Positions 1-48,388 of a stretch of DNA of 64,000 nt are shown piece after piece. The notes below the pieces were generated by a model. The model worked only from the letters and a program-made list of their open reading frames with translations, did not search any database and had not been told where the DNA came from. The DNA is taken from sequence record NC_048674.1; one strand, given 5' to 3'. The position numbers were made by a program, and so were the translations under genes. Numbering within the stretch: position 1 is the stretch's first letter; each line of letters starts with the position of its first letter.

Positions 1-655
1 GAAATCGTCCATCATCTGAGTAACAAGGGAGGTTGTTGGAACGATTAGCAATATTTTCCCATCATAATTAGTCATATACCAGTAACAAATAAGAGCTGCT
101 ATTAGGGATTTACCGGCAGACGTAGGAAGGTTTAAGATACCCCGGTTATTCTGAATTGCGTAATAAACCGCATCAGCCTGATACCAGTGCGCGGTAATCT
201 TATTTCCCCCAGAATATATATCAATATCAGCCAACCATTTATCAAACTCTTCTCTAGATGTGAAATGGTTAATAGGAGTAAAGTCTTCTTCTTTTTCAAA
301 TTCGTATTCGTTTCTANGCCAGCCATAATACCATGAGAAAATTCCCGTCTCATAAACTGGTAATCCGCGAAATCGTCCATCATCTGAGTAACAAGGGAGG
401 TTGTTGGAACGNNNNNNNNNNNNNNNNNNNNNNNNNNNNNNNNNNNNNNGCGCAATATTTCTCAAGGTTATTGACCAGACCATAAGGGAATTTTCCATCA
501 GGTTGTAGGAGACGGATCCGACCATCCCAACCGCTATATTTAANNNNACCACCTTCCGTCTCAAATGAATAATACTCTCTCAACTCCATGAAGATGTCAC
601 GTTCACACTCGATAATTGCATTACTATAGTCGTTGAATTTAACTGATACTTTCAT
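1..655 (-). CDS. uvsW: UvsW DNA helicase, 5' part (fragmented by assembly gaps, runs off window start)
   Basis: N-terminus MKVSVKFNDYSNAIIECERDIFMELREYYSF...WDGRIRLL matches T4 UvsW. Positions ~1-295 read WYQADAV...NLPTSAGKSLI (Walker A)...IVPTTSLVTQMMDDF. Positions ~295-411 are a misplaced downstream piece next to an N gap. Confidence 0.88.
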
Positions 656-689
656 CTCGTTCTCTCTTTAAATTTTTCACATATATAAT

Positions 690-710
690 TATTTAGGGCA
701 ACACTAAATA
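690..710. promoter_or_regulatory. Divergent pair of late promoters (CTAAATA): minus strand for uvsW, plus strand for ORF 756
   Basis: TATTTAG at 690-696 and CTAAATA at 704-710, between divergent genes. The same motif precedes the spanins and tail fibre. Confidence 0.65.
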
Positions 711-755
711 AATGCGAGGGAATACCATTTCCTCGTGACGTAGGGAGAAAATAAA

Positions 756-1118
756 ATGCTTATAAATAGTAAGCTGTTTAAAGACACCCTACCCGTCCTA
801 ACCGTTATTGTGGCGATCTGGGCCTCTATATTTTCATATAATGAATTTATAGCGGATTCCCGCCAAGTAGCTTTTAAAGAGCAAATCACTTCCCACATGG
901 ACAAATCTATAGATAACCTAAGAACGGAGATTAAATCTCTCCCAAATAAGGATTCTGTAGAAACTGCTCAACTGCGGGCAATGCTTTATAGTAAGGATCT
1001 TATCGATGAGGTTAATAGGGGGAACCGAGTTGAATTGGAGAGACTTGAGAAGCGGATCAGTGAGATGGAAAACGCCAGAGTTGAGAAGAAAACTCAAACA
1101 AAACGCGAGGACGGTTAA
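756..1118 (+). CDS. Late-expressed protein with one N-terminal TM helix and a coiled coil
   Basis: Hydrophobic LPVLTVIVAIWASIFSY segment, heptad-rich C-terminus, upstream CTAAATA, downstream terminator. Confidence 0.7.
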   Translation: MLINSKLFKDTLPVLTVIVAIWASIFSYNEFIADSRQVAFKEQITSHMDKSIDNLRTEIKSLPNKDSVETAQLRAMLYSKDLIDEVNRGNRVELERLEKRISEMENARVEKKTQTKREDG

Positions 1119-1131
1119 GTTGTCTAACGTG

Positions 1132-1163
1132 GGTCATGATGCAATTTGCTCATGGCCTTTTTT
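1132..1163 (+). terminator. Intrinsic terminator
   Basis: Stem ggtcatgatgc/gctcatggcc followed by T6. Confidence 0.7.
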
Positions 1164-1177
1164 CTTTTAAAAAGGGG

Positions 1178-1207
1178 TTGACTCATGAAACTTGTGTGTA
1201 GTATTAT
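1178..1207 (+). promoter_or_regulatory. Early sigma70-type promoter
   Basis: TTGACT then TATTAT (18-nt spacer), followed by a GAGG RBS. Confidence 0.7.
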
Positions 1208-1239
1208 CTATCTCGTTGAGACACAAAAGAGGAATTACA

Positions 1240-1722
1240 ATGCTGAATGATCCTTACGAGTTGTTTTTTGATATGGATGGGGTGATGGCTGACTGGTGTC
1301 GTGCATTCGATGCTCGTTTTGGTGAGGGTGCGGCAGAACAGTTTGACAGTCTGAACAAAGAAGATAAGAATCTTATCAAAGAAGAACTGGCAAATGGTAA
1401 TTTCTATCGTCATCTTCCGGTGATGGAAAAAGGGGTTTCTCTGGTTATTGAGATGGTTCGTAGTGGTCGCAAGGTAAGTATCTTAACCAGCGTCGGTCGT
1501 CAAAACCCAGAGAACGTAGTTCGCCAGAAGAAAGCTTGGGTCTCTTATGTATATCCTGCTGACGTCGCTGCGGTACTGTTAGAAAACTTCCATTATACCC
1601 TGTGTAGTGAAGACAAAGCCGCGTTTGCTCGTCCTAACGTTTGTCTGGTTGATGACCGTGCCAAGAGCCGCATCCCGTTCATCGCTGCTGGTGGTGTTGC
1701 TGTTGATATCGCTGACCTTTAA
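1240..1722 (+). CDS. HAD-superfamily phosphatase, 5'(3')-deoxyribonucleotidase (NT5C)-like
   Basis: Motif I FDMDGVMAD, motif II ILTS, motif III K (EDKAAFA), motif IV LVDDR. Start chosen after the RBS. Confidence 0.8.
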   Translation: MLNDPYELFFDMDGVMADWCRAFDARFGEGAAEQFDSLNKEDKNLIKEELANGNFYRHLPVMEKGVSLVIEMVRSGRKVSILTSVGRQNPENVVRQKKAWVSYVYPADVAAVLLENFHYTLCSEDKAAFARPNVCLVDDRAKSRIPFIAAGGVAVDIADL

Positions 1723-1734
1723 GAGGAATTAATT

Positions 1735-2070
1735 ATGTTGGTAGAAAGTTTGTCTGTTGGTGTTGTTTGTCTTGGTCTGGCATATGGTCTTGACAAGTTT
1801 TTAGGAACTGGTATATTTTCTTGGAAAGAGAAAACCCCATCAAAACTGATGCGATCTAACGCAGATCAAGATTCAGTAATGAGGAACCAACACCACCAAA
1901 AAGGTATGATCGCCAAAAATGTGTTTGGTAAATTTTATGGTGGAAAACACAAAGCTAGGGTAAGTTATACCGAGAAAGAAATTTGTGTCCCTCACCCGGT
2001 AATTGTTAACTTTATTAACAACCTTTATAAAGAAAGGAAACAAAAATGTGTAACGAAGAATTGCAAGTAA
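1735..2070 (+). CDS. Hypothetical protein with N-terminal hydrophobic helix
   Basis: RBS gaggaa, in operon, typical codon usage. Confidence 0.6.
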   Translation: MLVESLSVGVVCLGLAYGLDKFLGTGIFSWKEKTPSKLMRSNADQDSVMRNQHHQKGMIAKNVFGKFYGGKHKARVSYTEKEICVPHPVIVNFINNLYKERKQKCVTKNCK

Positions 2071-2369
2071 AATACCCAAACATTTATTTTTCGAAGTACT
2101 GCACAGGGTCTTATTGGCGAAAAGGGGTTGGTGGTCGAGATGCAGAAGCACTCCCACGAAACAAACCACTTGAGTTCCTTAACGAACAGTGTGGTTTGGT
2201 AAATGTAGGTGTTCGATATTTTGTATGTACTTGTTGTGGTACTGCACAAGACGAAGACCAACTTGTTGGTAATGTGTTTGCTGGGAAATATTGCAAAACC
2301 TGCTATGACAAAGAGCCACAAATTCGCAAATCTATTGCTGAAAGCAAAAAACCCGGTTTTTACGACTAA
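2046..2369 (+). CDS. Hypothetical Zn-finger protein
   Basis: CTCC...CKTC cysteine pairs. Confidence 0.6.
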   Translation: MCNEELQVKYPNIYFSKYCTGSYWRKGVGGRDAEALPRNKPLEFLNEQCGLVNVGVRYFVCTCCGTAQDEDQLVGNVFAGKYCKTCYDKEPQIRKSIAESKKPGFYD

Positions 2370-2384
2370 ATAAAAGGAAATAAT

Positions 2385-3386
2385 ATGATTTTTGTAAAAT
2401 ATAACTCTCTTGAGAACCACTATCGTCAAAACGTCATCGACTCTTTTGCAACTTCCGGATATACTGCAAAGGGTGTTGAATGGGTTGCAATGGAAAAGAT
2501 TCATGGTACTAATTTTCAACTTGCTGTAAATGATGAACATGTACAGGCTGGTCGTCGAACTGATCTTCTTGGTGATTTTGACCAGTTTTATGAAGCAGAC
2601 CTGATTGTAAAGAAATATCATGATAATGCCCGAAAAGTATACAACTTTGTTAAACAAAAACACCCAGAAGTTGATCAAGTTACAATCTTCGGGGAATATG
2701 CCGGTAATCTTACTACTGGAAAAATGATTCAAAAAGAAGTAGAGTATGGAGATCAAGACTTTTATGTGTTTGATATCTTCATTTTCTCTGGTGAAACTGG
2801 AATGTACCTCTCCCACGATTTCGTTATGGATGCAATCGATGGGATCTTCAAACATGCCCCTGTTATCTACCGTGGGGATTTCGATGGTGTAACAAAACTC
2901 CCGAACGACTTCCAATCAGTTGTTATCCCAAGCAACAAAGCAGGAAAATTCGATCTTGTTGAAGGAACTGATAACATTGCGGAGGGGTTTGTTGCGAAGA
3001 CAGTAGACCCACATTATACCCGTCAAGGTCGGACTATTTTCAAATCTAAAAACTCCAAGTTTACAGAGAAAGGGAAATCTGACAAACCGGTAAAGGTAAA
3101 AGAGCCTCTGGGTGAATCAGATCTTGCTATGGTTCATGAGATTGCTGAATATATCAACGTGAATCGTCTTAAAAATGTCCTCAGTAAGATTGGGATCCCT
3201 ACCACCAAAGAGTTTGGTAAGGTTTCTGGTAACCTCTCGAAAGACGCAATTGAAGATTTCACGAAGGATACCAGCAAAAATCTACGAGATGCAGAACGTC
3301 CTTCTGATGTAGGTAAAGCAGTGAACAACCTAGCAGGGGAACTTGTTCGGGAACACTGGATGAATATCCTTGATGGAAATTTCTAA
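2385..3386 (+). CDS. rnlB: RNA ligase 2
   Basis: KYNSLENHY N-terminus, motif I EKIHGTNF, IFGEYAG, FYVFDI, EGFVAK, FKSKNSKFTEK, all matching T4 Rnl2. Confidence 0.95.
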   Translation: MIFVKYNSLENHYRQNVIDSFATSGYTAKGVEWVAMEKIHGTNFQLAVNDEHVQAGRRTDLLGDFDQFYEADLIVKKYHDNARKVYNFVKQKHPEVDQVTIFGEYAGNLTTGKMIQKEVEYGDQDFYVFDIFIFSGETGMYLSHDFVMDAIDGIFKHAPVIYRGDFDGVTKLPNDFQSVVIPSNKAGKFDLVEGTDNIAEGFVAKTVDPHYTRQGRTIFKSKNSKFTEKGKSDKPVKVKEPLGESDLAMVHEIAEYINVNRLKNVLSKIGIPTTKEFGKVSGNLSKDAIEDFTKDTSKNLRDAERPSDVGKAVNNLAGELVREHWMNILDGNF

Positions 3387-3434
3387 AAATAAATGAAAAA
3401 ANATATCGAAACAAGAGACAAAAAGGAACGAACC

Positions 3435-4070
3435 ATGAACAACGAAAAATTCAATGAAATTATGGAAAACGTAGTTGGTATGGTTGAAGCCGGTTTTGTT
3501 TCTAAGGCCGGTCAGAAACGCGCCCTAAACGAATGCGCAAAAATGATGGAACTGGTGCGGGCCGAATTCTCTTCTTTCTATCTGGACTCCATCAACATCG
3601 AACAGCGTAATATGAATCTTCCGGAACACGAAGCAGCGGTAGACCTTTATTATGCACAACCAAACACCGCGACTTTCGCCAAATATCTGGTAAAAGCAGA
3701 AAAAGCAATGCCTTGGATGGATAAAGCTCTGTGTGAAGAATTGGTTTCTATGGGTGAACAGGTTGTTGCTATGATTGAAACAGTTAAAAACGCTCCAATC
3801 AACCAACCAGAACCGAAAGTTAGCGAGAAAGAAGCCGTTATAAAGAAAAACATCATGGAGATCATGGAACTTCGGGGTGAACAGTTCAACCGGTGTCTTC
3901 GTTTGGATGAGATGTTTGGTCGGATGATGGTAACCGCTAACGTTCACCTTGTTCGTGGACACAAAGGTACTGTGTTTGTTCGCGCCTTCTACTACGTTTG
4001 TGGACACCTGACCCCCCTGAATGTAATCATTGCTGCTATGGAAGAAGCAGCAAAAAAAGAAACCAAATAA
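3435..4070 (+). CDS. Hypothetical early protein
   Basis: Long ORF with highly expressed codon usage and aggaa RBS. Confidence 0.7.
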   Translation: MNNEKFNEIMENVVGMVEAGFVSKAGQKRALNECAKMMELVRAEFSSFYLDSINIEQRNMNLPEHEAAVDLYYAQPNTATFAKYLVKAEKAMPWMDKALCEELVSMGEQVVAMIETVKNAPINQPEPKVSEKEAVIKKNIMEIMELRGEQFNRCLRLDEMFGRMMVTANVHLVRGHKGTVFVRAFYYVCGHLTPLNVIIAAMEEAAKKETK

Positions 4071-4091
4071 CTTTAAATTGAGGAATGAAAA

Positions 4092-4811
4092 ATGAAAAAG
4101 CGGTTTGTTAGTTTTGCTATCTTAGGTGCTATGTGTGCTATTAGTGCGGTACAGGTTAATGCGGCATCTTTTGACTGTGAGAAAGCATCGAGTAAAATAG
4201 AACGAACTATTTGTGCAGACGAACGGCTGAGTGAATCAGATGAGAAACTGAATTCTGTTTATAAAGAAGTTCGAAAAATTAACCCAGCGATCATAGAAGG
4301 TCAGCGAGATTGGGTCAAACGTCGTAATAAAGCATCTTCAATCGAAGAACTCGACCAACTTCATGAAACTCGGATCCAAGAACTTGAATCCATGCTTAAA
4401 CCAATCATCGAACAAGATGATGAAAGTGTGTTCACTCGTTCCGAACAACCAAAAATCAAGAAAGTGTCTGTTGTTGAAAATAAAAACGTAGTGAAAGACA
4501 TTAAATATTATGTCGATGAAGTACAACGTACTGGTGGAATGACTAATAAGGATGGATTCTTTTCCGCAAAAGAAGTGGGTAAGGGTTATCCTAGTTGGTT
4601 AAAAGGTTGTGGGATGGTTGTGGGTGAAGCACACGGTACAAAATATTTCATCAACGATGCCAAGAAATATGGTCAATTTGATATCTATATCCAGAATGAA
4701 TTGAGCTTTAAAACTGTTGCGGCTAATATCATGATTAAAAATATGGTAGATTCCGTAAAAGGCGATCTAGGTCTTGTTAAAATTATGTGTGATTCCGGAG
4801 AATTATATTAA
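4092..4811 (+). CDS. Secreted protein with LprI (DUF1311) lysozyme-inhibitor-like N-terminal domain
   Basis: Signal peptide followed by AASFDCEKASSKIERTICADERLSESDEKLNSVY...QRDWVKRRN...RIQEL, the typical LprI signature. Confidence 0.75.
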   Translation: MKKRFVSFAILGAMCAISAVQVNAASFDCEKASSKIERTICADERLSESDEKLNSVYKEVRKINPAIIEGQRDWVKRRNKASSIEELDQLHETRIQELESMLKPIIEQDDESVFTRSEQPKIKKVSVVENKNVVKDIKYYVDEVQRTGGMTNKDGFFSAKEVGKGYPSWLKGCGMVVGEAHGTKYFINDAKKYGQFDIYIQNELSFKTVAANIMIKNMVDSVKGDLGLVKIMCDSGELY

Positions 4812-5077
4812 TGAACCCCAAAGCTCGTGAATTGATGATAGAGCTATTCAATAACGGGATCGAGTGTAGGTTGGTATCTTCATCCACAAGCTCTTATATC
4901 GACGTACAGGGGCATATGGTGAGGGTTTCAGACCACGGAGGTCATTCTAAGTTCAAAGGAACTCAGATCCGAAAAGACCATGGCTATAAAAAGACCAAAT
5001 ATGGTATGATCTTTGGGTATAACGAGATTGGGATGGCAGTAAAATATCTCAAATCCCTAAATACATTAACAAACTAA
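4811..5077 (+). CDS. Hypothetical protein (RVSDH motif)
   Basis: Translationally coupled ORF. Confidence 0.6.
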   Translation: MNPKARELMIELFNNGIECRLVSSSTSSYIDVQGHMVRVSDHGGHSKFKGTQIRKDHGYKKTKYGMIFGYNEIGMAVKYLKSLNTLTN

Positions 5078-5089
5078 GAGGAATGCGAA

Positions 5090-5887
5090 ATGGCATTGAA
5101 TTATGTAGAAGAACCAGTAGAAAAAGAAACTAAACCAAAAAAGTCTACTGCGAAAAAACAAAAAGAGCTTGACCTTGGGGTAATCAACGAAATTGTTGAT
5201 GCTAATACCGCACCAGAAGCGAAAGCGAAAATTCAAGCATATGCTAAGGAATGTGGTTTTAAAATTAGCAAGTCTAATACTTCGGTTGACGATATGATCG
5301 TTAAACTCCTTGAAATGGCGGACGCCAAAGAGAATGAAAAACTGGACCTTGCACCGGAACCGAAAGAAAAAACCCCTTTTGTCGAACCAGTTGTAGTCGA
5401 TGATGAATTCGACAATGTAGAAGAGGTTATTGAACTTGGTGTGGTTGAATCAATCAAAATTGATGATGGGGTGGTTAATATCAATACTCCTAACGATGTT
5501 AAAATTGAATTCACTCCACCGAAACAACCAGAATATATTGATGCTTCTGGGTTTAAAACTCTCGACGAATTAATTGAAGATGAAAAGAAGTTCGTTAAAG
5601 AAAAAATGAATTTGGAAACTACTAAAGATACCCAAGAACCGGATTTGACTTATGGTTTCAAGCCGAAAGTAAATCTGATTGGTGCTGTTGGTAACCAATA
5701 CCTCAATTGCCCGTATTGGATTCTTGATTGGATCCTTGATAAAGGACCGTCTTGGAAGAGTATTATTGATACTCATGAACGCGAACCGGATAAAGCACTT
5801 CTGAAAACAGTTCTTTATTACATCCAGATTAATGGTAGTGTGACATTGCGCGAGAGTCGTAATTCTCGGTTCCATACCATTTATTAA
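5090..5887 (+). CDS. inh: Inhibitor of prohead protease (Inh)
   Basis: Acidic N-terminal and middle region. C-terminus FKPKVNLIG...YLNCPYWILDWI...VLYYIQINGSVTLRESRNSRF resembles T4 Inh. Lies near uvsW and rnlB as in T4. Confidence 0.8.
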   Translation: MALNYVEEPVEKETKPKKSTAKKQKELDLGVINEIVDANTAPEAKAKIQAYAKECGFKISKSNTSVDDMIVKLLEMADAKENEKLDLAPEPKEKTPFVEPVVVDDEFDNVEEVIELGVVESIKIDDGVVNINTPNDVKIEFTPPKQPEYIDASGFKTLDELIEDEKKFVKEKMNLETTKDTQEPDLTYGFKPKVNLIGAVGNQYLNCPYWILDWILDKGPSWKSIIDTHEREPDKALLKTVLYYIQINGSVTLRESRNSRFHTIY

Positions 5888-5892
5888 TATCT

Positions 5893-5930
5893 AGCCATCC
5901 TATGGGGTGGCTTTTTTGTATCCCTAAATA
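5893..5930 (+). terminator. Terminator after inh, followed by late promoter CTAAATA (5924-5930)
   Basis: agccatcc-tatg-gggtggct then T run, then ccctaaata. Confidence 0.7.
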
Positions 5931-5968
5931 CCAATTGACCATTTTGGTCAATATAAGAAGGGTGTTTA

Positions 5969-6190
5969 ATGGAATACAATTTCATCGAAGTTAATGAAAA
6001 TATTTTTGTTCTTACTGGATATTTCGGATCTTATAATTTGATTGAGAGATGGAAAAGACTTGAAGAAGATGACCATTTAATGATCGTGAAGATAAAGGAA
6101 TATTTGGGGAAGGGGAATATTGTGGTTGTACATGATGTACAAGAAGATTTATTCGTTAAGCTAGATGGAGATAAATTTTACGTTTTTTGA
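5969..6190 (+). CDS. Hypothetical protein
   Basis: ORF downstream of CTAAATA, followed by hairpins and a terminator at 6237-6261. Confidence 0.55.
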   Translation: MEYNFIEVNENIFVLTGYFGSYNLIERWKRLEEDDHLMIVKIKEYLGKGNIVVVHDVQEDLFVKLDGDKFYVF

Positions 6191-6316
6191 TTTCGTATTG
6201 TATCAGACATTACGAATGTTTTTAACTTTTATACTTAGGTGGTCGAGAGATCACCTTTTTTGTATCTTTTATATACAAAATAAAATAGTTTCACTTGTAA
6301 TCAAAGTATAAAATCT

Positions 6317-6390
6317 CTATAAGTATTTATATAGAAGATCTATAATTAGAGAGCGAAGCGAACCGCCGAAGGCGTACTCACTACGTTCGT
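6317..6390. repeat. Copy 1 of 34-bp AT-rich box plus mini-hairpin cluster
   Basis: ctataagtatttatatagaagatctataattaga (6317-6350) is identical to 48238-48271. It is followed by gagcgaagcgaaccgccgaaggcgtactcactacgttcgt. Confidence 0.9.
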
Positions 6391-6406
6391 ATTTTAAGGA
6401 GTAAAA

Positions 6407-6787
6407 ATGTTAAATTGGTTCAAGAAAACTGATACACTAGATCTGGTTGTAGAGATCTCTTATTACGATTCCATGAATTGTCTGGTGTTAATTGATACCC
6501 CCGAGATTCCTGTTACCTTCACAAAAGGTTGTGACGTTAGGGAAACAATAAATTCCACAATCATCACGTTTGCCAAAAACGATAATAAGATCCAAAGTGC
6601 ATTTAAAGATATTCGTGTTCCATCATTTGTTCGTAGTGGTTGGTTAGACGATTATAAACAAATACACAATGGGAATTTCGAAAAAGTAAAATCAAATCGT
6701 AAATTTTGGAATCATACCATTATCGATGCATCCGGTGCAAAAACATGGTGGGGTAAAGATATTCAAAGGTCTATTAAGGGGAAATGA
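6407..6787 (+). CDS. Hypothetical protein
   Basis: aaggag RBS, intact ORF. Confidence 0.65.
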   Translation: MLNWFKKTDTLDLVVEISYYDSMNCLVLIDTPEIPVTFTKGCDVRETINSTIITFAKNDNKIQSAFKDIRVPSFVRSGWLDDYKQIHNGNFEKVKSNRKFWNHTIIDASGAKTWWGKDIQRSIKGK

Positions 6788-13746: not shown

Positions 13747-14804
13747 ATGTGTGGTCAGTGCCCTGTAGATGATTTCATTGGACAAACTTTTCCTACTCCG
13801 AAAGGTGGGGTGTTGACTGTTGTTGGTATTGCGGATAGGAAGAGTGGGACACATAAATTGTATAAATTGACTTGTTCTATCTGCCATGAAGATAAAGAAT
13901 TGTTTCCCGAGTTGTTTGAGAGTACAAAGGGTAATTTGGTAACTGGGCGTGCTCCTTGTGGATGTTCTAATAGAACAAACTGGAAACCTTTTCAGATAGA
14001 AGTTATTGTAGGCCGGTTATGTAAAGAAATGGGCTATGAATATGTTGGCTTTCCAGAAGGTTATAAAAACTGCTACTCTAAATTTGAATACATCTGTCAT
14101 ACTCATGGAAAACAATCAGTATCTNNNNNNNGGAGGTGCCCTGATTGTGGAACTGAGTCTATGAAGGATAAACAGAGAAATCCAGAAGCAGAAACTATTG
14201 TTAAAGAACTCTGTGATAAAGAAGGTTATGAATACATCGGTTTTCCAGAAGGATATAAAAACGCACATTCTAAGTTCGAATACATCTGTCATACTCATGG
14301 AAAACAATCAGTATCGTTAATTGTTGTCAGAGGTGCCCTGATTGTGCGGAATATGGTTATGGCAAATCCAAACACGGATACCTTTACGTAACCAACTGGA
14401 CAAACTACGATAAAGATACAAACGAGTTTTTCAAGATTGGTATCACAAACTTCTTAGATCAACGTATCAAACAACAAGCTCGTAAAACGTCGTACAAGCC
14501 CCATCAGCTAATTGTATTCAAATTCGAGGATGGTTCTATCCCCCAAGAGCTAGAACGTCTCACAAAGCCATACAGGCAGGATATGGAGCATCCTATCATC
14601 ACACCAGACGAGTTTGTTGATGGTGCAACAGAAATCCTCCAAAACTGGATTGATATTATTAAAATTCTCCCAGAACTGATTGACACAATCAGGGAGAAAG
14701 GACACACTCCTGAAATAGAAGTTGGTAAACGACTTTACAACAAGTTGATTAAGCTTGACAAAGACCAAATGGCTAAGGTAATCTTAGATCATCTTTATAA
14801 ATGA
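13747..14804 (+). mobile_element. Hef / GIY-YIG (T5orf172-like) free-standing homing endonuclease with Cys/His repeats, frameshifted near 14315-14326
   Basis: Two repeats of GYEY.GFPEGYKN..SKFEYICHTHGKQSVS...RCPDC. An alternative frame continues CQRCPDCAEYGYGKSKHGYLYVTNW...FFKIGITNFLDQRIKQ into ORF 14583-14804. Confidence 0.7.
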
Positions 14805-16164: not shown

Positions 16165-16407
16165 TGTATCAAAGTGAAATAAGGAAAAATTATGTTTATT
16201 TCCTCTATTGATGAAAATGAAAAGCTAGTAGTTCAATCCAAGTATGATTCGGGTGTCCATCTAGGTTTCACCGCAGGCGTCCAGAAAGATGGTGAATATA
16301 CTCTGACTACTCTAGACAAAGAGCTTACCGCCCAACAGATCTCGTATCTTGAGATGATGTTGATGATGGAAATCAAAAAGATGCTAGACCCACGCTAAGG
16401 AAAAATT

Positions 16408-16620
16408 ATGAAAGTCCAGTTTAAATCAGAAGAAGCTATGACTGAGTTTAAAACGTTAGATCGCAACAACGAAGAACTAGCAAATGCATATGGTATGAGT
16501 CCCATCCCTATTGGATTTGTAGATGAAGAATGGTGGGATATCTTTAATGAGGAAGATCTGCATTTTTACACCATTAACATTTCCGACGAATCTCACTATT
16601 TCGATATTTTGGAAAATTAA
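16408..16620 (+). CDS. MKIRFK-family paralog 1
   Basis: MKVQFKSEEAMTEF...GMSPI...WWD...ESHYFDILE. Confidence 0.8.
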   Translation: MKVQFKSEEAMTEFKTLDRNNEELANAYGMSPIPIGFVDEEWWDIFNEEDLHFYTINISDESHYFDILEN

Positions 16621-16623
16621 TTC

Positions 16624-16674
16624 AAAAACGCTTGCTCTCGGGTAAGCGTTTTGTTATTCTATTCTTGTTGAAGC
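16624..16674 (+). promoter_or_regulatory. Terminator/promoter cassette (PeSL-like), copy A
   Basis: Stem aaaacgcttgc/gtaagcgtttt. TTGCTC - 17 nt - TATTCT. 50/51 nt identical to 17251-17301. Confidence 0.85.
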
Positions 16675-17028
16675 AAAACAGATGAGGAAAATAACATGGC
16701 AGAATTTATCACAGAAACATCTAACAAGACTCACCACAAAGTGGTTCAACTTCGCAAGGCCATTCGCAAGGTTGATACCGCAAAGATTGCTATCTTTCGG
16801 AAAACAGATTTGACTGATGCATATCGTGAGTACAACTACGCAATGTATCGTGCAGTTGAGGAAACCGGGGATCACAAAATTTATATCGACTTCAAATACA
16901 ACCAACCAAAAGAGAAAATAATTGATCTGGTCGAAAAAATTTGTTCCATAGAAGACACCAAGGTAGAATGGAATGGTTCTATGGGTAGTTCCATCGTTGT
17001 TACCATCAAAGTTGAATAAGGAAAAATT

Positions 17029-17238
17029 ATGAAAGTCCGTTTTGTGTCAGAAAAAGCCATGAATGAATATGGTGAAAAAGACCGTCATAACAAGCTCGTT
17101 GTAGAACGTTTTGGTATGAACCCATTTGAGGTAGATACGGATCCCGATTGTGCTTGGTGGGACTATCTCGACGAAAATGGTGATATTGAGTTTGTCTTCC
17201 CCCGTTTTGAACATCATTACTTTTTAACCAACGTTTAA
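17029..17238 (+). CDS. MKIRFK-family paralog 2
   Basis: MKVRFVSEKAMNEY...GMNPFEV...WWD...EHHYF. Confidence 0.8.
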   Translation: MKVRFVSEKAMNEYGEKDRHNKLVVERFGMNPFEVDTDPDCAWWDYLDENGDIEFVFPRFEHHYFLTNV

Positions 17239-17250
17239 GAAAATAATTCA

Positions 17251-17301
17251 AAAAACGCTTGCTCTCGGGTAAGCGTTTTGTTATTCTATCCTTGTTGAAG
17301 C
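17251..17301 (+). promoter_or_regulatory. Terminator/promoter cassette (PeSL-like), copy B
   Basis: Near-identical to 16624-16674. Confidence 0.85.
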
Positions 17302-17457
17302 GAGACTGATAAGGAAAACGATATGACCAACTTTGAATTTGCTATGAAACGCGCTAAATTCCAAATCACCAAGCACAAAGAGACTTTGATCTGTGCTGGT
17401 ATTGTTGGTGTTGTTCTTTTCGTTATCATCCCTATGTTGAACGGTTAAGGAGTTATT

Positions 17458-17844
17458 ATGCTGAACAAACGTTATACTGTAAAAAAAGATTTTGAAGATT
17501 TCCACAAAGAATTTCCCGAACTGGTTTTGGGTTCTTCTTTCACGGTAACAGGGACAGACGGAACCGGTATCATATCTATCACCATGGATAGTGGAACTGA
17601 ATATCATATCGAACAATATCCTTGGTGTTGGTGCTTCTACACAGAAGATATGATAGAAGAATATCTTGTCCAAGTTGAAAACCTCACAGACGAAGAAAAG
17701 AAAGACTTGATAGTTGCCAACTTGAAGAAGAAAGAAAAGGAGATGGAAGAAAAGAAAGCTTTGTTGTTGGCAAATTGGGAGAAGGAAGAGAAGGAGTTGA
17801 TTGAAGCTCTGGAAAACCATCGCAAAAATAAGCCGGGGGTTTGA
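17458..17844 (+). CDS. MLNK..WCFY-family protein with C-terminal coiled coil
   Basis: N-terminal domain aligns with 25051-25290. Confidence 0.7.
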   Translation: MLNKRYTVKKDFEDFHKEFPELVLGSSFTVTGTDGTGIISITMDSGTEYHIEQYPWCWCFYTEDMIEEYLVQVENLTDEEKKDLIVANLKKKEKEMEEKKALLLANWEKEEKELIEALENHRKNKPGV

Positions 17845-18838
17845 TATGATTTCTTTGGTGGCATTATCTTGTTATGCTCCGATATACTTCATTGTTCAGC
17901 TAGGGGAAAAGATAAATCGTGATGTGATTCTATCTTGTATTCTCATGATCTTTACTATCGTTCTGGTATTCTGTACCACCACGATCACCCTAAAATATGG
18001 AACAAACCCGGTGGTATTGTTTTGGATTTGTCAAACGAACATCCTTACTTGTCTGATGGCTAAAATAATTTCAAAAAGTCTTTGACTCTATAGCTAGTTC
18101 TGGTAATATACCTATGTACCCCCACTGATGAGGAAATTGAAATGAAAATTCTTTTTACCGACCACCAAGCCGAACTAATCAACCGCATCAAGGCTTATCA
18201 CGATAACCGCATCGCTCTGACAATTTCCCCTGAGTCTCGCGCATTTCGCGATATGATGGAAGGACAAGAGTTGTGCAATTCTCAGTGTATTGCTCTCCGC
18301 AACTTCTTCGGTCGGGTCATCGATTATGATGCATGTGATAATGATATCGCTGCTGATGAAATGACCAAATACATGTACGGGGTTATGCGTGACCAAGTTC
18401 GCAACTGGCTGTTTGAGGAATAAGATATGAAAAAGATTATGGAAGCTCTGGGATATGTTTGGTTCGAAACCCGTGGCGATTTTGTTGCTACTATCGGTCC
18501 ATGGGAAGAGAGTTATACCTATTATGAAGAAGCTGATTTCCCTTGCTGGTTGAAACTAGTGGATTCTCTCGATAGCCCATACAACGCAAAAACAATTATG
18601 ATTTACGACCGTGTTTCTGAATCTCTGGTGGGAGAAATTAAGTTTGAAAAATTGTGATTTGATTAAGATTCTTCAAGAACGAGATCCAAATGCAAAAGTA
18701 GAATTTGTTTTCTTCGGTAATCATTTTGACGTTGAAGGGCTAGTACATTTTGACCCAACCGGTTATAACGCTATCGAGCTGTATGGTAAGGCGTTACATG
18801 AGATGGAAATTGTTGTTACTTTCAACCAAGGATAAAAT

Positions 18839-19337
18839 ATGTTCTATGCACTGAAAAACAAATATACTGGTAAAGTTGCTATGGTAGAGGTGTGTGGTGA
18901 AGCTGTTTATTTGGTAGATGATGAAGCAATTGGAGATCATGCAGTTGCTTTTGTCTACACCGAAACCACCTCACAGAAAATTCAAGATACGTTGGATGGT
19001 GTCAACGACAATCTGTTTGTCCAAATCGACCCAGAACAATACGATATCGTGGAAATTCAAATTTAGAAGATGATTTTGTAAAATGGGAATTGTTGTTACT
19101 TTCAATCAAGGATAAAATATGATTCTCTATGCGTTAAAAAATAAACATACTGGGCGGTTAGCAGTCATTGAAGGCGCGGATTTGTCTATCGTTGTTGATG
19201 AGTATTCTGAGGTTATGTATCCTTTTGTGGAACGACGTTTGGAAGATATCCATCATCTGTTGGAAGACCGCCACACAGACTATTACCGTGGTATTAACCC
19301 AGACGATTACGATATCGTGGAATTTATTTTGAAATAA
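18839..19337 (+). CDS. Two tandem paralogous ORFs (18839-19066, 19119-19337)
   Basis: YALKNK.TG..A..E N-termini and PE/DD.YDIVE C-termini. The upstream junction sequence is also duplicated. Confidence 0.75.
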
Positions 19338-19343
19338 ATGATA

Positions 19344-19381
19344 AAAAGGGCTTGCTTCGGTAGGCCCTTTTCGACTATTAT
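19344..19381 (+). promoter_or_regulatory. UUCG terminator / early promoter cassette
   Basis: aaaagggcttgc-ttcg-gtaggccctttt. TTGCTT...TATTAT. Confidence 0.75.
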
Positions 19382-19649
19382 ATCCATATCGAAATTAGCC
19401 GAGGGAATTAACATGAACTTCTTTAATTATATTGTTGTGATGAAAACTGTTAACGGTATGGAAAGATTTTTGGTCTCTGCTATGGATCCTTCTAAGGCCA
19501 AGAAAAAGGTTATGGATTACTTGGTTGACGAATGCATTCCGTTTAGTTGTTCCTATCCGAGGAATGAAACTATACGAGTTGCAGATTCCCAAGTGGAAGA
19601 AATGAAAAATCGCTCTGATATCAAAACCCTTTATGTTTAAGGATCTATT

Positions 19650-19868
19650 ATGAAAATCAAATTCAAATCCGAAGCACATATGAACGAGTTCGCAAATATC
19701 AACCTTGGTTGGTCTTCCCACAATAAAGATCTGGTTCTTCGTCATGGTATGAACCCTTTCGAGGTTGAGGTTGATATTACTGAATCTTGGTGGGATACGG
19801 TAGATGGTGATTTCACTATCCATAAAACTGGTGAAGGAATTTATTTTGAAATAGTTGTTGCATCGTAA
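19650..19868 (+). CDS. MKIRFK-family paralog 3
   Basis: MKIKFKSEAHMNEF...GMNPFEV...WWDTVDGDFTI...YFEIV. Confidence 0.8.
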   Translation: MKIKFKSEAHMNEFANINLGWSSHNKDLVLRHGMNPFEVEVDITESWWDTVDGDFTIHKTGEGIYFEIVVAS

Positions 19869-22337
19869 TCCTGTTCTGGTATTATATCCATATCGAATCA
19901 CTGGTGATTCTTCGAGAGGATGAAATCCTCTCTATCGAAACGAGAGACGGAAAGGAAGAAATCATGAAACTCAGCAAAGCCCAAAACGAAGTAGTTGCTA
20001 TTTGTGTTGCGGAAGTTGAGCGTCTTTGGAACCAGTATCAAGTTGATTTGGTTCGCTGGGAAAACACTCCCAAGGGTAAGGCAAAAGAAGATATGACTTT
20101 CCGTCTGGGTGCTGTTAACCGTGCTACTGTTCGCGCTCTCATTAAGGCTGGTGTTCTGATTGTTGACCACAAGTTCAGTGTAAAAGAGCCTACTTTGAAG
20201 AAATATAACTATGGTCGCGACCGTGTTTATGGTGACAACTATTACGAAGAAAACATTTACCGTTTGAACAAAGAATTTATCAAATAACTCTTTACGCTTG
20301 TTTTTGCTTTTGGTAATATGTCTGTACACCAACTGAGAAGGAAATGACTATGAACACCAAACTCCGTAATCGCCTGAATAACATGCTTGGTAATCAAACT
20401 CTGGTTTGCACTTCTACTATCGGAACCATTACCATGAAGGCCGCACTTGATAATGGTGGTATGGACTTTGTTGTTGATGTGAGTATCACCACTGAAAATG
20501 GTGTTGAGAATAAAGGCCGTATGTACACCAAACAGGCGCTGGAAACTTACGGTGATTCCATCTCTCATATCGTTGTTAAGAATTATTAAGGGAAATCATG
20601 TTCGCATTTACCCGAGTAATATTTCTTTGTATTATCTATGGTGTTGGGTCTAGCCATTGTGGGGAGTATCATTGGGTTGGTACACTGTCGGTAACTCGTC
20701 GTGGACTTGTGATAAAGTATTGTCAAGGTAACAAATGGCGTGTTATGCTGGTAACAACTCGCGGCCTTTACAAAAACATTCAATCTGGGGTATGGAAAGT
20801 ATTATGAAAAGTTTTATCGTTTCCTTCAAAATTCAAAATGCATTTGGTGATAAAGTCCTTACCGAATACGTTTGGGCATACACCCCGAAATGTGCAGTCG
20901 AGAAGATCCAAGAAAAATATGTTGGCGTTTATCACGCTAAAGCAAAACTTGCTATCTAAGGGGATAGTATGAAAAATAAAATTCTTGTAGAACTAGTTGC
21001 AAAACAAACCAGTGATCTGATAAAATCTAATGGTCATCGAATGGCACTGGTGGCTTTGGGTAAATGGATTGAAGCCACACCATATATCACTGACGAGGAA
21101 CTTAATTTCCTCATGAATTTGGTTAAAGTATATCAGGAGCAATAATCATGGCTAAAGGTAAAGTAACTGCAAAATCTCTCCGCGCTGGTCAGACTGTATA
21201 TCGTGTATGTGGTCCTACTGGTTTCATCACCAAGCTTCTGATCACCTCTCGTCCNTTTGTGTANAAGAAAAAAGATTCTGTGCTNAATGGTACTATCTGG
21301 GTGAACTATCGTAAGTGGTTCAAAACCAATAGTTACAAATTCGGTGTGGTTCGAGAAGTGAGTAACTTCTTTAATGATGATTTCAGCCTTACCGATGCTG
21401 GTATTGGTGGTAGTCATCCGGGTGGTACTAATCGCACCTTCTACACTTACAAGGCTGCCAAACGCTGGTCTGAGCACGTTAAATCGCTTCCTAAGAAACA
21501 GGAGTGCTGGGACGACGATCTATGGAGCCCAACCGATTATGATGACTTTCTAAGGGGATAGTATGATGGTTTTGATTGATACAAAGAATGTCCAACTTAA
21601 GTTATATTGGATGTCACAGGATACGATTGATACTTATCCGAGCGAGAAGGCTCAAGTCATCGAATTTATTATGTCTCTGGATAGTGATCTGGTTCCAATG
21701 GTCGAACTTAGTATCGACGAATATAATTTTCTTTTGCAAGTTATGTAAAAACTACTTGTAACGGTAATCGATTTATGGGATACTTTCCTTGTTGGGGAGT
21801 TTCCCACTTTCATTAGAGAATTTTATATGTATATTCGCTTTGATATTCAAGACCTGTTGGAACTTCTGGAAATGATTGGTGTGGGTTATTACGCTACCGA
21901 GACCAATTATGATGCAGATATCGGTTTTACCCAGACCAATTACATTTTCGATATTGACGGCCACAGGGTTATCCTGACTGAGCCAAGCTTCAATGATTAC
22001 GTTACCACCTGCGAGGTGAGTGATGTTGCTACCATGAAATATCTGGCGGAAGAAAACAATATCCCGTTTGAAATGAAAGACCACTACCTGTAAGGAGTTT
22101 ATTATGATGGATTTTATTAATAGTCAATTTGGTTTCGTTCTTATTACCACCATGTTTCTGTGTGGTATCGTGTTCAACGGTGTTGCAACCTATTACGAAT
22201 CTCGCAAATACAGTAAGATGGAGAAATTCCTTTCTTACTTGATGCACTTTGCCTTGTGTGCAATGTCTATCAACGGGTATGTTGAACTTCTGAAAATTAT
22301 GGATTTCAGCAAGATTATGGGTTGAAAATAAAATGAT

Positions 22338-22373
22338 AAATGGCTTGCTTCGGTGAGCCATTTGTTTTACTAT
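22338..22373 (+). promoter_or_regulatory. UUCG terminator / early promoter cassette
   Basis: aaatggcttgc-ttcg-gtgagccattt. TTGCTT - 17 nt - TACTAT. Confidence 0.75.
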
Positions 22374-22969: not shown

Positions 22970-22978
22970 GGAATNAAT

Positions 22979-23783: not shown

Positions 23784-23835
23784 TTGACTCTGAAAGAGTG
23801 TTTTGAGATACTAGCTTTGTCGGGAAATGGTTCCC
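23784..23835 (+). promoter_or_regulatory. Early promoter cassette shared with 46433-46484
   Basis: TTGACT...GATACT. gagatactagctttgtcgggaaatggttccc is 29/31 identical to 46454-46484. Confidence 0.75.
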
Positions 23836-26419: not shown

Positions 26420-26422
26420 ATT

Positions 26423-47740: not shown

Positions 47741-48209
47741 ACAAATTAAGAAAGACCAAATTAAAGCCCGTAAATCAGAAGACCGTTCTACCCATCACGG
47801 GAAAGTTCGTATCAACGCTCTAACAACCCTAATTGGTGAAGCAAGTCCTTCCGGTAATCAGGTAGTAACTGACGAACAAGTCCAATCGGTTATTCGCAAA
47901 TTCGTTAAAAACATTGACGAAGCAGTTACCGAGATCCGCAAAAGGGTTGTATCCGTATCAAACGATATGACTAATCAAGAAGTGATGGATATTCTTAAAA
48001 CTGATATCAAATTCACGGACTTGATGATCGAACGTGAACTGCTGAGTTCCTATCTTCCGAAGGTGTTTGGTGAAGAACATATCAAAGAGGTACTTAGTCA
48101 GCTCGTTGGTGGTTCTAACATCGGTCAAGTCATGGGCGCTTGTAAGAAAGCAGCTTCTGCCAAAGGTCTTTTGTTTGATGGTGCCCTTGTCAAAAAGGTA
48201 CTGGGTTAG
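47730..48209 (+). CDS. GatB/YqeY domain protein
   Basis: LLEQIKKDQIKARK...ALTTLIGE...VTDEQVQSVIRKFVK...IERELLSSYLPK...GQVMG...K. Confidence 0.8.
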   Translation: MLLEQIKKDQIKARKSEDRSTHHGKVRINALTTLIGEASPSGNQVVTDEQVQSVIRKFVKNIDEAVTEIRKRVVSVSNDMTNQEVMDILKTDIKFTDLMIERELLSSYLPKVFGEEHIKEVLSQLVGGSNIGQVMGACKKAASAKGLLFDGALVKKVLG

Positions 48210-48237
48210 TATCATATGAAATCAAATTATAGATTTC

Positions 48238-48312
48238 CTATAAGTATTTATATAGAAGATCTATAATTAGAACGAGTGAAACGAGTACGGCGTAGCCGGT
48301 TCGCTAAAGCTC
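48238..48312. repeat. Copy 2 of 34-bp AT-rich box plus mini-hairpin cluster (cluster inverted)
   Basis: 48238-48271 is identical to 6317-6350. The reverse complement of 48272-48312 shares the skeleton gagc-x-gcgaaccg-x-cgtactc-x-tcgt with 6351-6390. Confidence 0.9.
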
Positions 48313-48319
48313 ACCAATC

Positions 48320-48388
48320 TGTCTAGAATCAATTCCTCGTTATCTCATACAATGTTATTGTATTCTCCATAGGAATTGATTCTAGACA
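48320..48388. repeat. Perfect 18-bp inverted repeat
   Basis: tgtctagaatcaattcct (48320-48337) / aggaattgattctagaca (48371-48388), with an inner atacaat/attgtat hairpin. Confidence 0.9.

What the first reader, a model, noticed from the sequence alone, without database searches (positions are those of the whole stretch)
6317..6390. Duplicated AT-box plus GNA-mini-hairpin element with an inverted, covarying hairpin cluster (candidate origin or priming element)
Seen: a 34-bp AT-rich box is identical at 6317-6350 and 48238-48271, about 42 kb apart and both intergenic. Each is followed by a ~40-nt GC-rich cluster. Copy 1 is gagc-GAA-gcgaaccg-CCGAAGG-cgtactc-ACTACGT-tcgt. The reverse complement of copy 2 is gagc-TTTA-gcgaaccg-GCTACGC-cgtactc-GTTTCAC-tcgt. 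The spacers are invariant, while the variable parts remain short hairpins, mostly with GAA or GTA triloops on one strand or the other (GC-GAA-GC, CGCC-GAA-GGCG, CGGC-GTA-GCCG, GT-GAA-AC). The box keeps its orientation but the cluster is flipped. The box also contains TATAAATA on the minus strand. Known: d(GNA) triloop hairpins are exceptionally stable and occur in single-strand origins and linear-replicon termini, and T4 origins pair a promoter with an AT-rich unwinding element. Inference: this is a structure-selected cis element such as a replication origin, primase or helicase loading site, or packaging signal. No feature category explains it.
Basis: partly seen in the sequence, partly recalled or inferred. 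Interest (0 to 1): 0.8.

Follow-up and report, generated by a model that had tools for sequence, protein, structure and literature searches.

The report
Repeated promoter-like box with hairpin module
A 110-base intergenic cassette, an AT-rich palindromic box ending in TATAAT followed by a GC-rich folded module, sits at 5 to 7 conserved places in a group of T4-like Aeromonas phages; it is most likely an undescribed promoter-plus-leader element, not a proven replication origin.

Summary
The window is Aeromonas phage AS-sw, a T4-like Ceceduovirus. The 34-bp identity (6317-6350 and 48238-48271) is real and not chance. It is the core of a 65-bp AT-rich box, followed by a roughly 45-nt GC-rich module. 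AS-sw has 5 such cassettes and phage 65 has 7, at the same intergenic positions in both genera. They were found only in 21 Emmerichvirinae records and two metagenome contigs.

The box is an imperfect palindrome. Its right arm ends in TATAAT-TAGA, with A2 and T6 invariant in 21/21 copies. It has no -35 hexamer. The module starts 4-10 nt later and never occurs without a box. It has a covarying GC cap hairpin and two interleaved 5-bp inverted repeats.

The GNA-triloop, TATAAATA late-promoter and T4-type origin ideas do not.

Copy 1's left flank, window 1-6350, is an inverted duplicate of 120.5-126.9 kb, joined inside the box. This is an assembly chimera or a box-mediated recombinant.

Best reading (0.45): a -35-independent promoter cassette with a structured 5' leader, in phages that carry AsiA but no MotA. 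Origin, protein-binding site and mobile element remain as rivals.

The parts
6237..6256 (+). Intrinsic-terminator-like hairpin followed by a T run. It ends the inh-gp012 unit about 30 nt upstream of cassette copy 1.
   Evidence: Found by the terminator scan. An identical copy lies upstream of c3 at 120.6 kb.
6286..6316 (+). Copy 1, left extension of the box. It holds the invariant TCA..TG.AATCAAA.TATA. On the minus strand, 6305-6310 reads TATACT, which is -10-like.
   Evidence: the repeat finder family D13 and the 21-copy alignment A1. In this record the stretch is of the c3 type, while CC2's orthologue differs at 3 positions.
6317..6350 (+). Copy 1, the 34-bp core box. Palindrome arms are at 6307-6321 and 6330-6344 around the centre 6322-6329. 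The TATAAT -10-like hexamer is at 6341-6346, followed by the invariant TAGA.
   Evidence: Exact duplicate of 48238-48271. Invariant columns are in A1. No -35 hexamer was called.
6351..6390 (+). Copy 1, GC-rich module. Stem X is CGAAC 6359-6363 pairing with GTTCG 6385-6389. The cap hairpin is CGCC 6364-6367, loop GAA, GGCG 6371-6374. The CTCAC block is at 6377-6381.
   Evidence: Alignment A2, pair counts, RNAalifold consensus of stem X plus cap, and single-sequence fold.
6396..6409 (+). Shine-Dalgarno AAGGAG (6396-6401) and the ATG of gp013 (6407-6409), 6 nt after the module.
   Evidence: Sequence and annotation. Phage 65 has the same arrangement upstream of the homologue ST65p283.
48207..48237 (+). 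Copy 2, left extension of the box. Its first three bases, TAG, are the stop codon of gp134 (tRNA amidotransferase).
   Evidence: The same overlap occurs in phage 65.
48238..48271 (+). Copy 2, 34-bp core box with TATAAT at 48262-48267.
48272..48312 (+). Copy 2, GC-rich module in inverted orientation relative to most copies. The cap is CGGC 48288-48291, loop GTA, GCCG 48295-48298.
   Evidence: The orientation test favours the reverse complement.
48321..48387 (+). Long hairpin with a perfect 17-bp stem, in the leader between module 2 and gp135 (ATG at 48408). It is a separate feature of this locus.
   Evidence: strand folding z = -4.83. Conserved in CC2, AP1 and AS-yj.
1..6350 (.). Inverted duplicate of AS-sw 120,531-126,897 (uvsW fragment, rnlB, inh, gp012, box), joined to the gp013 block inside the box.
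   Evidence: 1,488 bp are exactly identical and 6 kb is 98.4% identical. Homology with relatives starts at 6286. CC2's real upstream flank is absent from the record.

Best explanation
The two sites are copies of a conserved two-part regulatory cassette found in Emmerichvirinae, the T4-like Aeromonas phages.

Part 1 is a 65-bp box of about 20% GC containing an imperfect palindrome. Its right arm carries a consensus -10 hexamer (TATAAT) followed by the invariant TAGA. It has no -35 hexamer. I infer that it acts as a -35-independent promoter, read by host sigma-70 RNA polymerase. These phages encode AsiA, which blocks -35 recognition, but have no recognisable MotA. A phage or host protein bound to the conserved upstream palindrome probably assists.

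Part 2 is a roughly 45-nt GC-rich module that begins at the predicted transcription start. It would form the 5' end of the RNA. It consists of a GC cap hairpin held by a 5-bp stem (CGAAC/GUUCG), plus a second 5-bp complement (GUGAG/CUCAC) that can form either a pseudoknot or an alternative long hairpin. I infer a structure-only role, such as a 5'-terminal stabiliser or a processing or pause signal. That would explain why an inverted module is tolerated.

Shown: the anatomy, copy number, conserved positions, covariation in the cap, the flip, and concerted evolution of the copies.

Inferred: promoter activity, timing, the binding factor and the RNA role.
For: 1. Copy number and position. AS-sw has 5 copies and phage 65 has 7. 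All are intergenic and lie at orthologous loci: inh-to-gp24, gp013/p283, ndd, vs.1 and 54/26. At the two loci compared (inh and p283), the flanks are syntenic.
2. The -10 hexamer. TATAAT is present in 19/21 aligned copies. The other two read TACAGT, so A2 and T6 are invariant. TTAGA and AATCAAA are also invariant.
3. Placement. At 4 of 6 loci the cassette points at a co-oriented gene whose SD and ATG lie 6-110 nt after the module. It often sits just after a terminator hairpin or a stop codon.
4. Coupling. The module starts 4-10 nt after TATAAT in every copy and is never found without a box.
5. Structure. The cap stem shows compensatory changes (CGGC/GCCG, CGCC/GGCG, CCC/GGG, CGCGC/GCGCG). About 91% of cells are paired, and 0/500 shuffles reach the observed paired fraction. 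RNAalifold returns stem X plus the cap. A metagenome relative changes CGAAC to CGAGC, which keeps the pair as G.U. The distance between the repeat halves varies with cap length, which argues for a single-strand fold over a duplex binding site.
6. Transcription factors. AsiA is encoded in the window (Pfam E = 6e-21). Hinton 2010 (PMC2988021) reports that phage 65 has asiA but no recognisable motA and may have a functional analogue.
7. Concerted evolution. The box core is 96% identical among AS-sw copies and 89% among phage 65 copies, but only 75-81% between orthologous copies of the two genera. This fits recognition by a co-evolving factor, gene conversion, or both.
Against: - The consensus scan calls no sigma-70 promoter in the box. 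There is no -35 hexamer and no TG-extended -10.
- Two of six loci (vs.1 and 54/26) point away from their neighbouring genes, with no ORF downstream.
- With only 5-7 sites and no wider class of half-sites, this cannot be the general middle-promoter class.
- The palindromic symmetry is not needed for a promoter. The left arm reads TATA[C/A/G/T]T on the other strand, so direction is ambiguous.
- Single-sequence folding energies are mostly unremarkable, and neither strand is consistently favoured.
- No transcript data exist for these phages in the literature I could search.
Confidence: 0.45

Rival explanations
1. Replication origin or priming site. The AT-rich palindrome would melt or bind an initiator. 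The GC hairpins, on either strand, would load primase or helicase. A transcript from the TATAAT might prime, as at T4 oriF and oriG. This overlaps with the promoter reading, because T4 origins contain promoters.
For: - The 5-7 dispersed copies are close to the number of origins I recall being described for T4 (own knowledge, not checked here).
- Orientation relative to genes is not fixed, and the module can be flipped.
- Phage 65 has a convergent box pair flanking two GC hairpins between genes 54 and 26.
- All stem pairs in most copies are Watson-Crick, so the fold would work in DNA on either strand.
Against: - The region downstream of the promoter-like hexamer is GC-rich, 44-60% in 25 of 26 copies, not a DNA unwinding element.
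- No iterons were seen.
- The module abuts the SD and ATG of the next gene at several loci, as a 5' UTR would.
- The DNA fold of copy 1 is no more stable than shuffled sequence.
- No replication data exist.
Confidence: 0.15
2. Duplex-DNA binding site for a phage or host architectural or regulatory protein that acts on something other than transcription initiation. Examples are an IHF-like bend site, a topoisomerase or condensation site, or a recombination site.
For: - The box is an imperfect palindrome with long invariant runs.
- AATCAAAnTATAA is one mismatch from the IHF core WATCAANNNNTTR. That consensus is from my own knowledge; the alignment is.
- The copies evolve in concert.
- The only crossover seen lies inside the box.
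Against: - It does not explain the obligatory GC module on the TATAAT side only.
- It does not explain the fixed position just upstream of start codons.
- The variable spacing of the module's repeats argues against duplex recognition of the module.
Confidence: 0.15
3. Small mobile or recombination-prone palindromic cassette, like PeSL, REP or MITE elements. Its main effect would be to spread and to shuffle neighbouring genes.
For: - Modules c3, c4 and c5 are identical at three different loci, whereas the corresponding loci in phage 65 carry different modules. This points to gene conversion between copies.
- The module is inverted at one locus.
- The synteny break and chimeric junction in the AS-sw record lie inside the box.
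- PeSLs are known to mediate such exchanges (PMC2839356, PMC4122927).
Against: - The positions are the same in two genera. At the two loci compared (inh and p283), the flanking genes are syntenic.
- There are only 5-7 copies, no standalone modules, and no target-site duplications were noticed.
- No transposase or RAYT-like gene is annotated.
Confidence: 0.1
4. Artefact: the pair reflects a mis-assembly that duplicated one sequence.
For: - The record is a scaffolded 'partial genome' with N runs.
- Window 1-6350 duplicates 120.5-126.9 kb in inverted orientation and joins the gp013 block inside the box.
Against: - Copy 2 is independent, with different flanks and a different module.
- Both loci exist with the same box in CC2, AP1, AS-yj and ZPAH1, and in diverged form in the complete phage 65 genome.
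Confidence: 0.03

Closest known systems
PeSL / PmSL cassettes of T4-type phages (Arbiol et al. 2010, PMC2839356; Comeau et al. 2014, PMC4122927)
   Same: - Both are short, repeated intergenic regulatory cassettes of T4-like phages that combine a promoter element, a stem-loop, an SD and a start codon.
- An AT-rich part is the site of a crossover. The AS-sw junction lies inside the box.
- Copies homogenise each other.
   Different: - PeSLs have a sigma-70 promoter with both -35 and -10. Their stem-loop is a terminator upstream of the promoter. They number in the dozens, cluster in hyperplastic regions and flank indels.
- This box has no -35. Its defining GC module lies downstream of the -10 and has no U run. 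There are only 5-7 copies, at syntenic loci in two genera.
T4 MotA/AsiA-dependent middle promoters (Hinton 2010, PMC2988021)
   Same: - A -10 of the TAnnnT type without a usable -35, with a conserved upstream element in its place.
- The phage encodes AsiA.
- Downstream genes (ndd, topoisomerase gene 52, and the nrd operon in phage 65) are prereplicative functions.
   Different: - No TGCTT MotA box at -30, and no recognisable motA gene.
- The conserved upstream element is a 40-bp palindrome plus a 20-bp extension.
- There are only a handful of sites.
T4 oriF (uvsY) and oriG (gene 34) origins
   Same: A promoter-like element combined with an AT-rich region, present at several sites per genome.
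   Different: - T4 origins are not homologous to one another.
- They have the unwinding element downstream of a MotA-dependent promoter.
- Here the copies are homologous and the downstream part is GC-rich and structured.
5'-terminal stabilising stem-loops and leader pseudoknots (E. coli ompA 5' UTR; T4 gene 32 leader); own knowledge
   Same: A stable structure within a few nucleotides of the predicted 5' end, followed by an unstructured AU-rich stretch, the SD and the gene.
   Different: Those are single-gene features. This one is a repeated, sequence-conserved module always coupled to one promoter-like box. It is tolerated in both orientations.

Membership tests
PeSL (promoter-early stem-loop cassette) | Sigma-70-like promoter with -35 and -10 hexamers 17 bp apart | tested here: not met
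   The consensus scan finds none in either box. The -35 position reads TATAAG or TATAAT.
PeSL (promoter-early stem-loop cassette) | Terminator stem-loop located just upstream of the promoter | tested here: inconclusive
   A terminator hairpin precedes the box at c1/c3, 65_inh and 65_g35, but not at c2. The family-defining GC module is downstream of the -10 and lacks a U run.
PeSL (promoter-early stem-loop cassette) | Many copies clustered in hyperplastic regions and flanking indels between close relatives | tested here: not met
   There are 5 and 7 copies, at orthologous loci. Flanks are syntenic at the two loci compared.
T4 middle promoter (MotA/AsiA) | MotA box (a/t)(a/t)(a/t)TGCTT(t/c)A centred at -30 | tested here: not met
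   The -30 region reads CTATAAGTATT in AS-sw and CTATAATATATT in phage 65.
T4 middle promoter (MotA/AsiA) | -10 element TAnnnT | tested here: met
   TATAAT in 19/21 copies and TACAGT in 2/21.
T4 middle promoter (MotA/AsiA) | Phage encodes both AsiA and MotA | tested here: not met
   AsiA is present. The genes between 52 and asiA give no MotA domain. The literature reports phage 65 has asiA but no recognisable motA. The whole proteome was not scanned.
T4-like late promoter | Late -10 motif on the strand of the gene served | tested here: not met
   The clade's late motif is (C)CTAAATA, 35-45 nt upstream of late genes. TATAAATA in the box is on the opposite strand, is not enriched in the window, and is absent from the phage 65 box.
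T4-type replication origin (oriF/oriG) | AT-rich DNA unwinding element downstream of the origin promoter | tested here: not met
   The 50 nt after the box are 44-60% GC in 25 of 26 copies, against 38% for the window.
T4-type replication origin (oriF/oriG) | Initiation of replication or R-loop formation at the site | not testable with these tools
   Needs marker-frequency analysis, 2D gels or plasmid replication assays.
d(GNA) triloop mini-hairpins | GNA loop closed by a C-G pair, conserved across copies | tested here: not met
   Cap loops are GAA, UAC, GUA, UCC, UGC, AAA, GUUA, UUU, UUC and AA.
Any Rfam RNA family (ribozymes, leaders, sRNAs) | Covariance-model match | tested here: not met
   No hit at gathering score in the window. 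Only noise appears at E <= 5 on the element and on 11 related loci.
REP/MITE-like mobile palindromic repeat | Element occurs on its own at many sites | tested here: not met
   A module profile finds only the copies next to boxes, in both complete genomes.
Intrinsic terminator | GC hairpin followed by a U run | tested here: not met
   No terminator is called at either module. The modules are followed by mixed sequence.

The most novel reading that the evidence does not exclude
The box would be the recognition site of a still unknown sequence-specific activator, a functional analogue of MotA. It would let AsiA-modified host polymerase start at a small set of -35-less promoters in MotA-less T4-like phages. 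The box changes in concert across all copies because it co-evolves with that protein. The leader module would be a pseudoknot-type regulatory RNA. The same sites might also serve as promoter-primed replication origins.
Probability: 0.2. Interest if true: 0.7.

Novelty: new variant of a known kind. Interest (0 to 1): 0.45.

Why it matters
T4's takeover of host sigma-70 by AsiA plus MotA is a textbook case. Several T4-like phages, including phage 65, Aeh1 and KVP40, carry AsiA without MotA. What replaces the MotA box and MotA in them is an open question (Hinton 2010, PMC2988021).

This cassette gives a concrete, sequence-defined candidate to test. It is conserved, lacks a -35, carries a -10 and evolves in concert. 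It offers a DNA bait for finding the binding protein and a compact leader RNA whose fold can be probed.

In practice, the repeat also breaks or mis-joins assemblies of these phages. The AS-sw record is chimeric at the box, and the AS-szw record starts 26 bases before it. These phages are being developed against fish pathogens, so that matters for genome quality.

Tried and rejected
- Late promoter. Rejected: the clade uses CTAAATA, TATAAATA is on the wrong strand, and it is not conserved.
- Canonical sigma-70 early promoter. Rejected: no -35. The window's true early-type promoters (TTGACT/TTGCAT-N17-TAATAT/TATTAT) form different repeat families (D4 and D8).
- MotA box. Absent.
- Known RNA family. 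None.
- tRNA or tRNA fragment. No tRNA was found near c3.
- Wider class of half-sites (CTATAA-N-TAnnnT, or TTAGA after a -10). Counts are at chance level outside the full cassettes.
- IMG/VR scan with a 17-mer from the box. It found only phage 65 plus AT-rich chance hits.
- Metagenome scan. It found two phage 65-like contigs and three chance hits.
- 'The flip is only an illusion of hairpin symmetry.' I held this view after the forward alignment A2. I dropped it after the leave-out profile test and the 18-nt exact reverse-complement match in ZPAH1.
- Modular shuffling at the cassettes between genera. Flanks are largely syntenic at the two loci compared; the script failed on the remaining loci.
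- Nested hairpin versus interleaved (pseudoknot) pairing. Both reach about 90% paired. The tools here cannot evaluate pseudoknots, so this is undecided.
- Literature search for the element in Aeromonas phage papers. Nothing found.

Full report
**Identity of the window.** The window is bases 1-64000 of Aeromonas phage AS-sw (MF498775 / NC_048674). This is a T4-like phage in Straboviridae, Emmerichvirinae, Ceceduovirus, and the record is labelled 'partial genome'. Window and record coordinates coincide.

**The observation.**
- The 34-mer occurs exactly twice in the window, at 6317-6350 and 48238-48271. No further copy appears at up to 3 mismatches, and none is expected by chance.
- Both sites are intergenic.
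- The similarity extends to 65 nt, 6286-6350 against 48207-48271, at 86% identity.
- Each copy is followed by a 40-41-nt stretch of 52-54% GC, in a 38% GC window.

**It is a family, not a pair.**
- A blastn-short scan of the whole AS-sw record finds five copies:
  - c1: 6286-6390 (+).
  - c2: 48207-48312 (+).
  - c3: about 120,531-120,642 (-), upstream of a DprA-like gene.
  - c4: about 78,314-78,427 (+), between genes 26 and 54 and antisense to both.
  - c5: about 187,326-187,418 (-), next to vs.1, antisense and full of Ns.
- A profile search of the complete phage 65 genome (genus Ishigurovirus) finds seven:
  - After inh (the c3 position).
  - Upstream of ST65p283, the gp013 homologue (the c1 position).
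  - After the tRNA amidotransferase gene, upstream of ndd and gene 52 (the c2 position).
  - Next to vs.1 (the c5 position).
  - A convergent pair between genes 54 and 26 (the c4 position).
  - One after gene 35.
- In both phages the stop codon TAG of the amidotransferase gene is the first three bases of the element.
- blastn against 50,697 phage records finds the element only in 21 Aeromonas phages of this subfamily, at 3-9 places each.
- An IMG/VR scan found only phage 65. A metagenome scan found two phage 65-like contigs.

**The box.** An alignment of 21 copies (A1) shows long invariant runs: TCA..TG.AATCAAA.TATA.A, CTAT, and T.TA.A.TTAGA.
- It contains an imperfect palindrome. In AS-sw the arms are 6307-6321 and 6330-6344 around an 8-bp centre. 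In phage 65 it reads TATAAAGTTCTAT-N9-ATAGAAACTTTATA.
- The right arm ends in TATAAT in 19 of 21 copies. The other two both read TACAGT, so positions 2 and 6 never vary.
- On the other strand the left arm reads TATA[C/A/G/T]T, which is also -10-like.
- There is no -35 hexamer and no TG extension. The consensus scan calls no promoter in the box.
- The window's ordinary early-type promoters form separate repeat families with TTGACT or TTGCAT and TAATAT or TATTAT.

**Not a late promoter.**
- Upstream of phage 65 late genes (23, 24, 20, 13, wac, 48, 4, 36, 34, hoc) the shared motif is (C)CTAAATA, not TATAAATA.
- In the window, CCTAAATA lies 35-45 nt before inh, gp012, the spanin gene and the tail-fibre gene.
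- TATAAATA is not enriched in the window and is absent from the phage 65 box.

**The module.** Eighteen distinct modules align (A2).
- The central cap is a 3-5-bp GC stem with compensatory changes: CGGC/GCCG, CGCC/GGCG, CCC/GGG, CGCGC/GCGCG.
- Its loop has no fixed sequence, so it is not a GNA motif.
- Around the cap lie two 5-bp inverted repeats, GTGAG...CTCAC and CGAAC...GTTCG. They are interleaved and are all Watson-Crick in most copies.
- The same bases can instead form a nested imperfect hairpin.
- Both schemes give about 90% paired cells. Sliding the partners drops pairing to 29-49%, and 0 of 500 shuffles reach the observed paired fraction.
- RNAalifold returns the CGAAC/GUUCG stem plus the cap.
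- A metagenome relative has CGAGC, which keeps the pair as G.U.
- Spacing between the repeat halves varies with cap length, which favours a single-strand fold over duplex recognition.
- Single-sequence stabilities are mostly unremarkable, with z from +0.3 to -4.6 and -0.4 for c1. Neither strand is consistently favoured.
- No Rfam family matches.
- The module is never found without a box. It starts 4-10 nt after TATAAT, which is at the predicted transcription start.

**The flip.**
- All modules can be aligned forward, because the module is quasi-palindromic.
- A profile built without the c2-type copies scores AS-sw c2 at 19-21 bits reversed and 12-13 bits forward. It scores ZPAH1's orthologue only in the reversed orientation.
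- The ZPAH1 ndd-locus module begins with the exact reverse complement of the 18-nt 3' end of the ZPAH1 gp013-locus module.
- The module at this locus really is inverted in the ZPAH1 and Ceceduovirus lineage.
- An inverted module keeps the same stem topology. This argues for a structure-only role, or a DNA-level one.

**Copy 1 and the assembly.**
- Window 4863-6350 is 100% identical to the reverse complement of 120,578-122,065. Window 1-6389 matches 120,531-126,897 at 98.4-100%. There is an N run at 412-449.
- Homology between relatives and the window begins at 6286.
- In CC2 the gp013-locus cassette has the same 34-bp core and module as c1, but its left extension differs at three positions. 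Its 2.5-kb upstream flank has no match in the AS-sw record.
- Window c1 is therefore a chimera of c3-left and c1-right, with the join inside the box. The cause is either a repeat-induced mis-assembly or a real box-mediated recombinant.
- The AS-szw record starts 26 bases before this element.
- The family and the c1-c2 identity do not depend on this junction.

**Evolution of the copies.**
- The box core is 96% identical among AS-sw copies and 89% among phage 65 copies. Orthologous copies in the two genera are only 75-81% identical.
- Modules c3, c4 and c5 are identical, although the corresponding phage 65 loci differ.
- This is concerted evolution, by gene conversion, by co-evolution with a binding factor, or both.
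- Flanking genes are syntenic at the two loci compared (inh and p283), so these are stable sites and not hot spots of gene turnover.

**Interpretation.** The best-supported reading is a -35-independent promoter cassette with a structured 5' leader. The evidence:
- An invariant -10.
- Placement after terminators (6237-6256; phage 65 copies) or stop codons.
- Co-orientation with the next gene at 4 of 6 loci.
- At the gp013 locus the SD and ATG follow within about 6 nt of the module (c1 in AS-sw and its phage 65 orthologue).
- AsiA is present in the window, while phage 65 is reported to lack a recognisable motA (PMC2988021).

Weaknesses of this reading:
- The two antisense loci.
- The small copy number, with no wider class of half-sites.
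- The unexplained palindrome.
- No transcript data.

I put this reading at 0.45.

A replication-origin role is not excluded. However, the T4 origin layout, with an unwinding element downstream of the promoter, is not met, and nothing positive supports an origin role.

**Comparison with PeSLs.** The cassette resembles PeSLs in being a repeated regulatory cassette that recombines (PMC2839356 and PMC4122927). It fails their defining features, which are a promoter with a -35, an upstream terminator stem-loop, and many copies at indels.

**Verdict.** This is a real, conserved and apparently undescribed cis element. I class it as a new variant of the phage promoter/regulatory-cassette kind, of moderate interest.

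Noticed in passing
window 1-6350 and 412-449; AS-sw 120,531-126,897: The record begins with an inverted duplicate (98.4-100% identical) of the uvsW-rnlB-inh region. It contains an N run and a 43-bp direct repeat (1-43 and 369-411). The 'partial genome' appears to be mis-scaffolded at the repeated box.
   Followed up: yes
window 48321-48387: A long hairpin with a perfect 17-bp stem and an inner 7-bp hairpin lies in the leader of gp135 (RNA fold z = -4.83). It is conserved in CC2, AP1 and AS-yj. CC2 has a similar long inverted repeat just upstream of its gp013-locus box. It could be a processing or regulatory site.
   Followed up: partly
window 18062-18121, 19838-19897, 23439-23498, 29746-29794, 30240-30288: Families of classical early-type promoters (TTGACT/TTGCAT, 17 bp, TGGTAATAT/TATTAT), often followed by a conserved leader ATCGAAACGAGAGAC (also at 3400, 19929, 30274 and 37785). 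This is a second repeated regulatory cassette, closer to PeSLs.
   Followed up: no
window 5056-5063, 5923-5930, 56940-56947, 57670-57677: CCTAAATA lies 35-45 nt upstream of inh, gp012, the spanin gene and the tail-fibre gene. The late-promoter motif of this clade is CTAAATA, not T4's TATAAATA.
   Followed up: yes
window 16400-27100: Many small paralogous genes start with ATGAAA(A/G)T(T/C)CGTTT(T/C)AAAGA. Several are annotated as goF-like mRNA metabolism modulators, which points to a large tandem paralogue expansion in the early region.
   Followed up: no
window 14032-14123 and 14224-14315: A 92-nt direct repeat (86% identical) inside the annotated endonuclease gene gp033, suggesting an internal domain duplication.
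   Followed up: no
window 52020-52292: AsiA anti-sigma factor (Pfam E = 6e-21). The two genes between gene 52 and asiA that were scanned (gp139 and gp140, where T4 has motA) gave no MotA domain.
   Followed up: partly
L083:4152-4352 (phage 65, 102,152-102,352): Two boxes in convergent orientation flank a 75-bp spacer. The spacer holds two GC hairpins (CGCC-AAA-GGCG and CGGGC-TTT-GCCCG) in place of the usual module, between late genes 54 and 26.
   Followed up: partly
L101:154-283 (ZPAH1) and L083:4223-4352 (phage 65 copy 54a): The same double change, TATAAT to TACAGT, occurs in two copies at different loci in different phages. It may be a shared variant spread by conversion, or a down-tuned promoter.
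   Followed up: no
L088, L089, L090 (metagenome contigs): Three unrelated contigs matched the 23-base spaced pattern TATAATTAGA...CTCACTACGTTCG, but neither the box nor the rest of the module is present. About one chance hit was expected by my own rough estimate, not a tool output, so three is slightly high.
   Followed up: no
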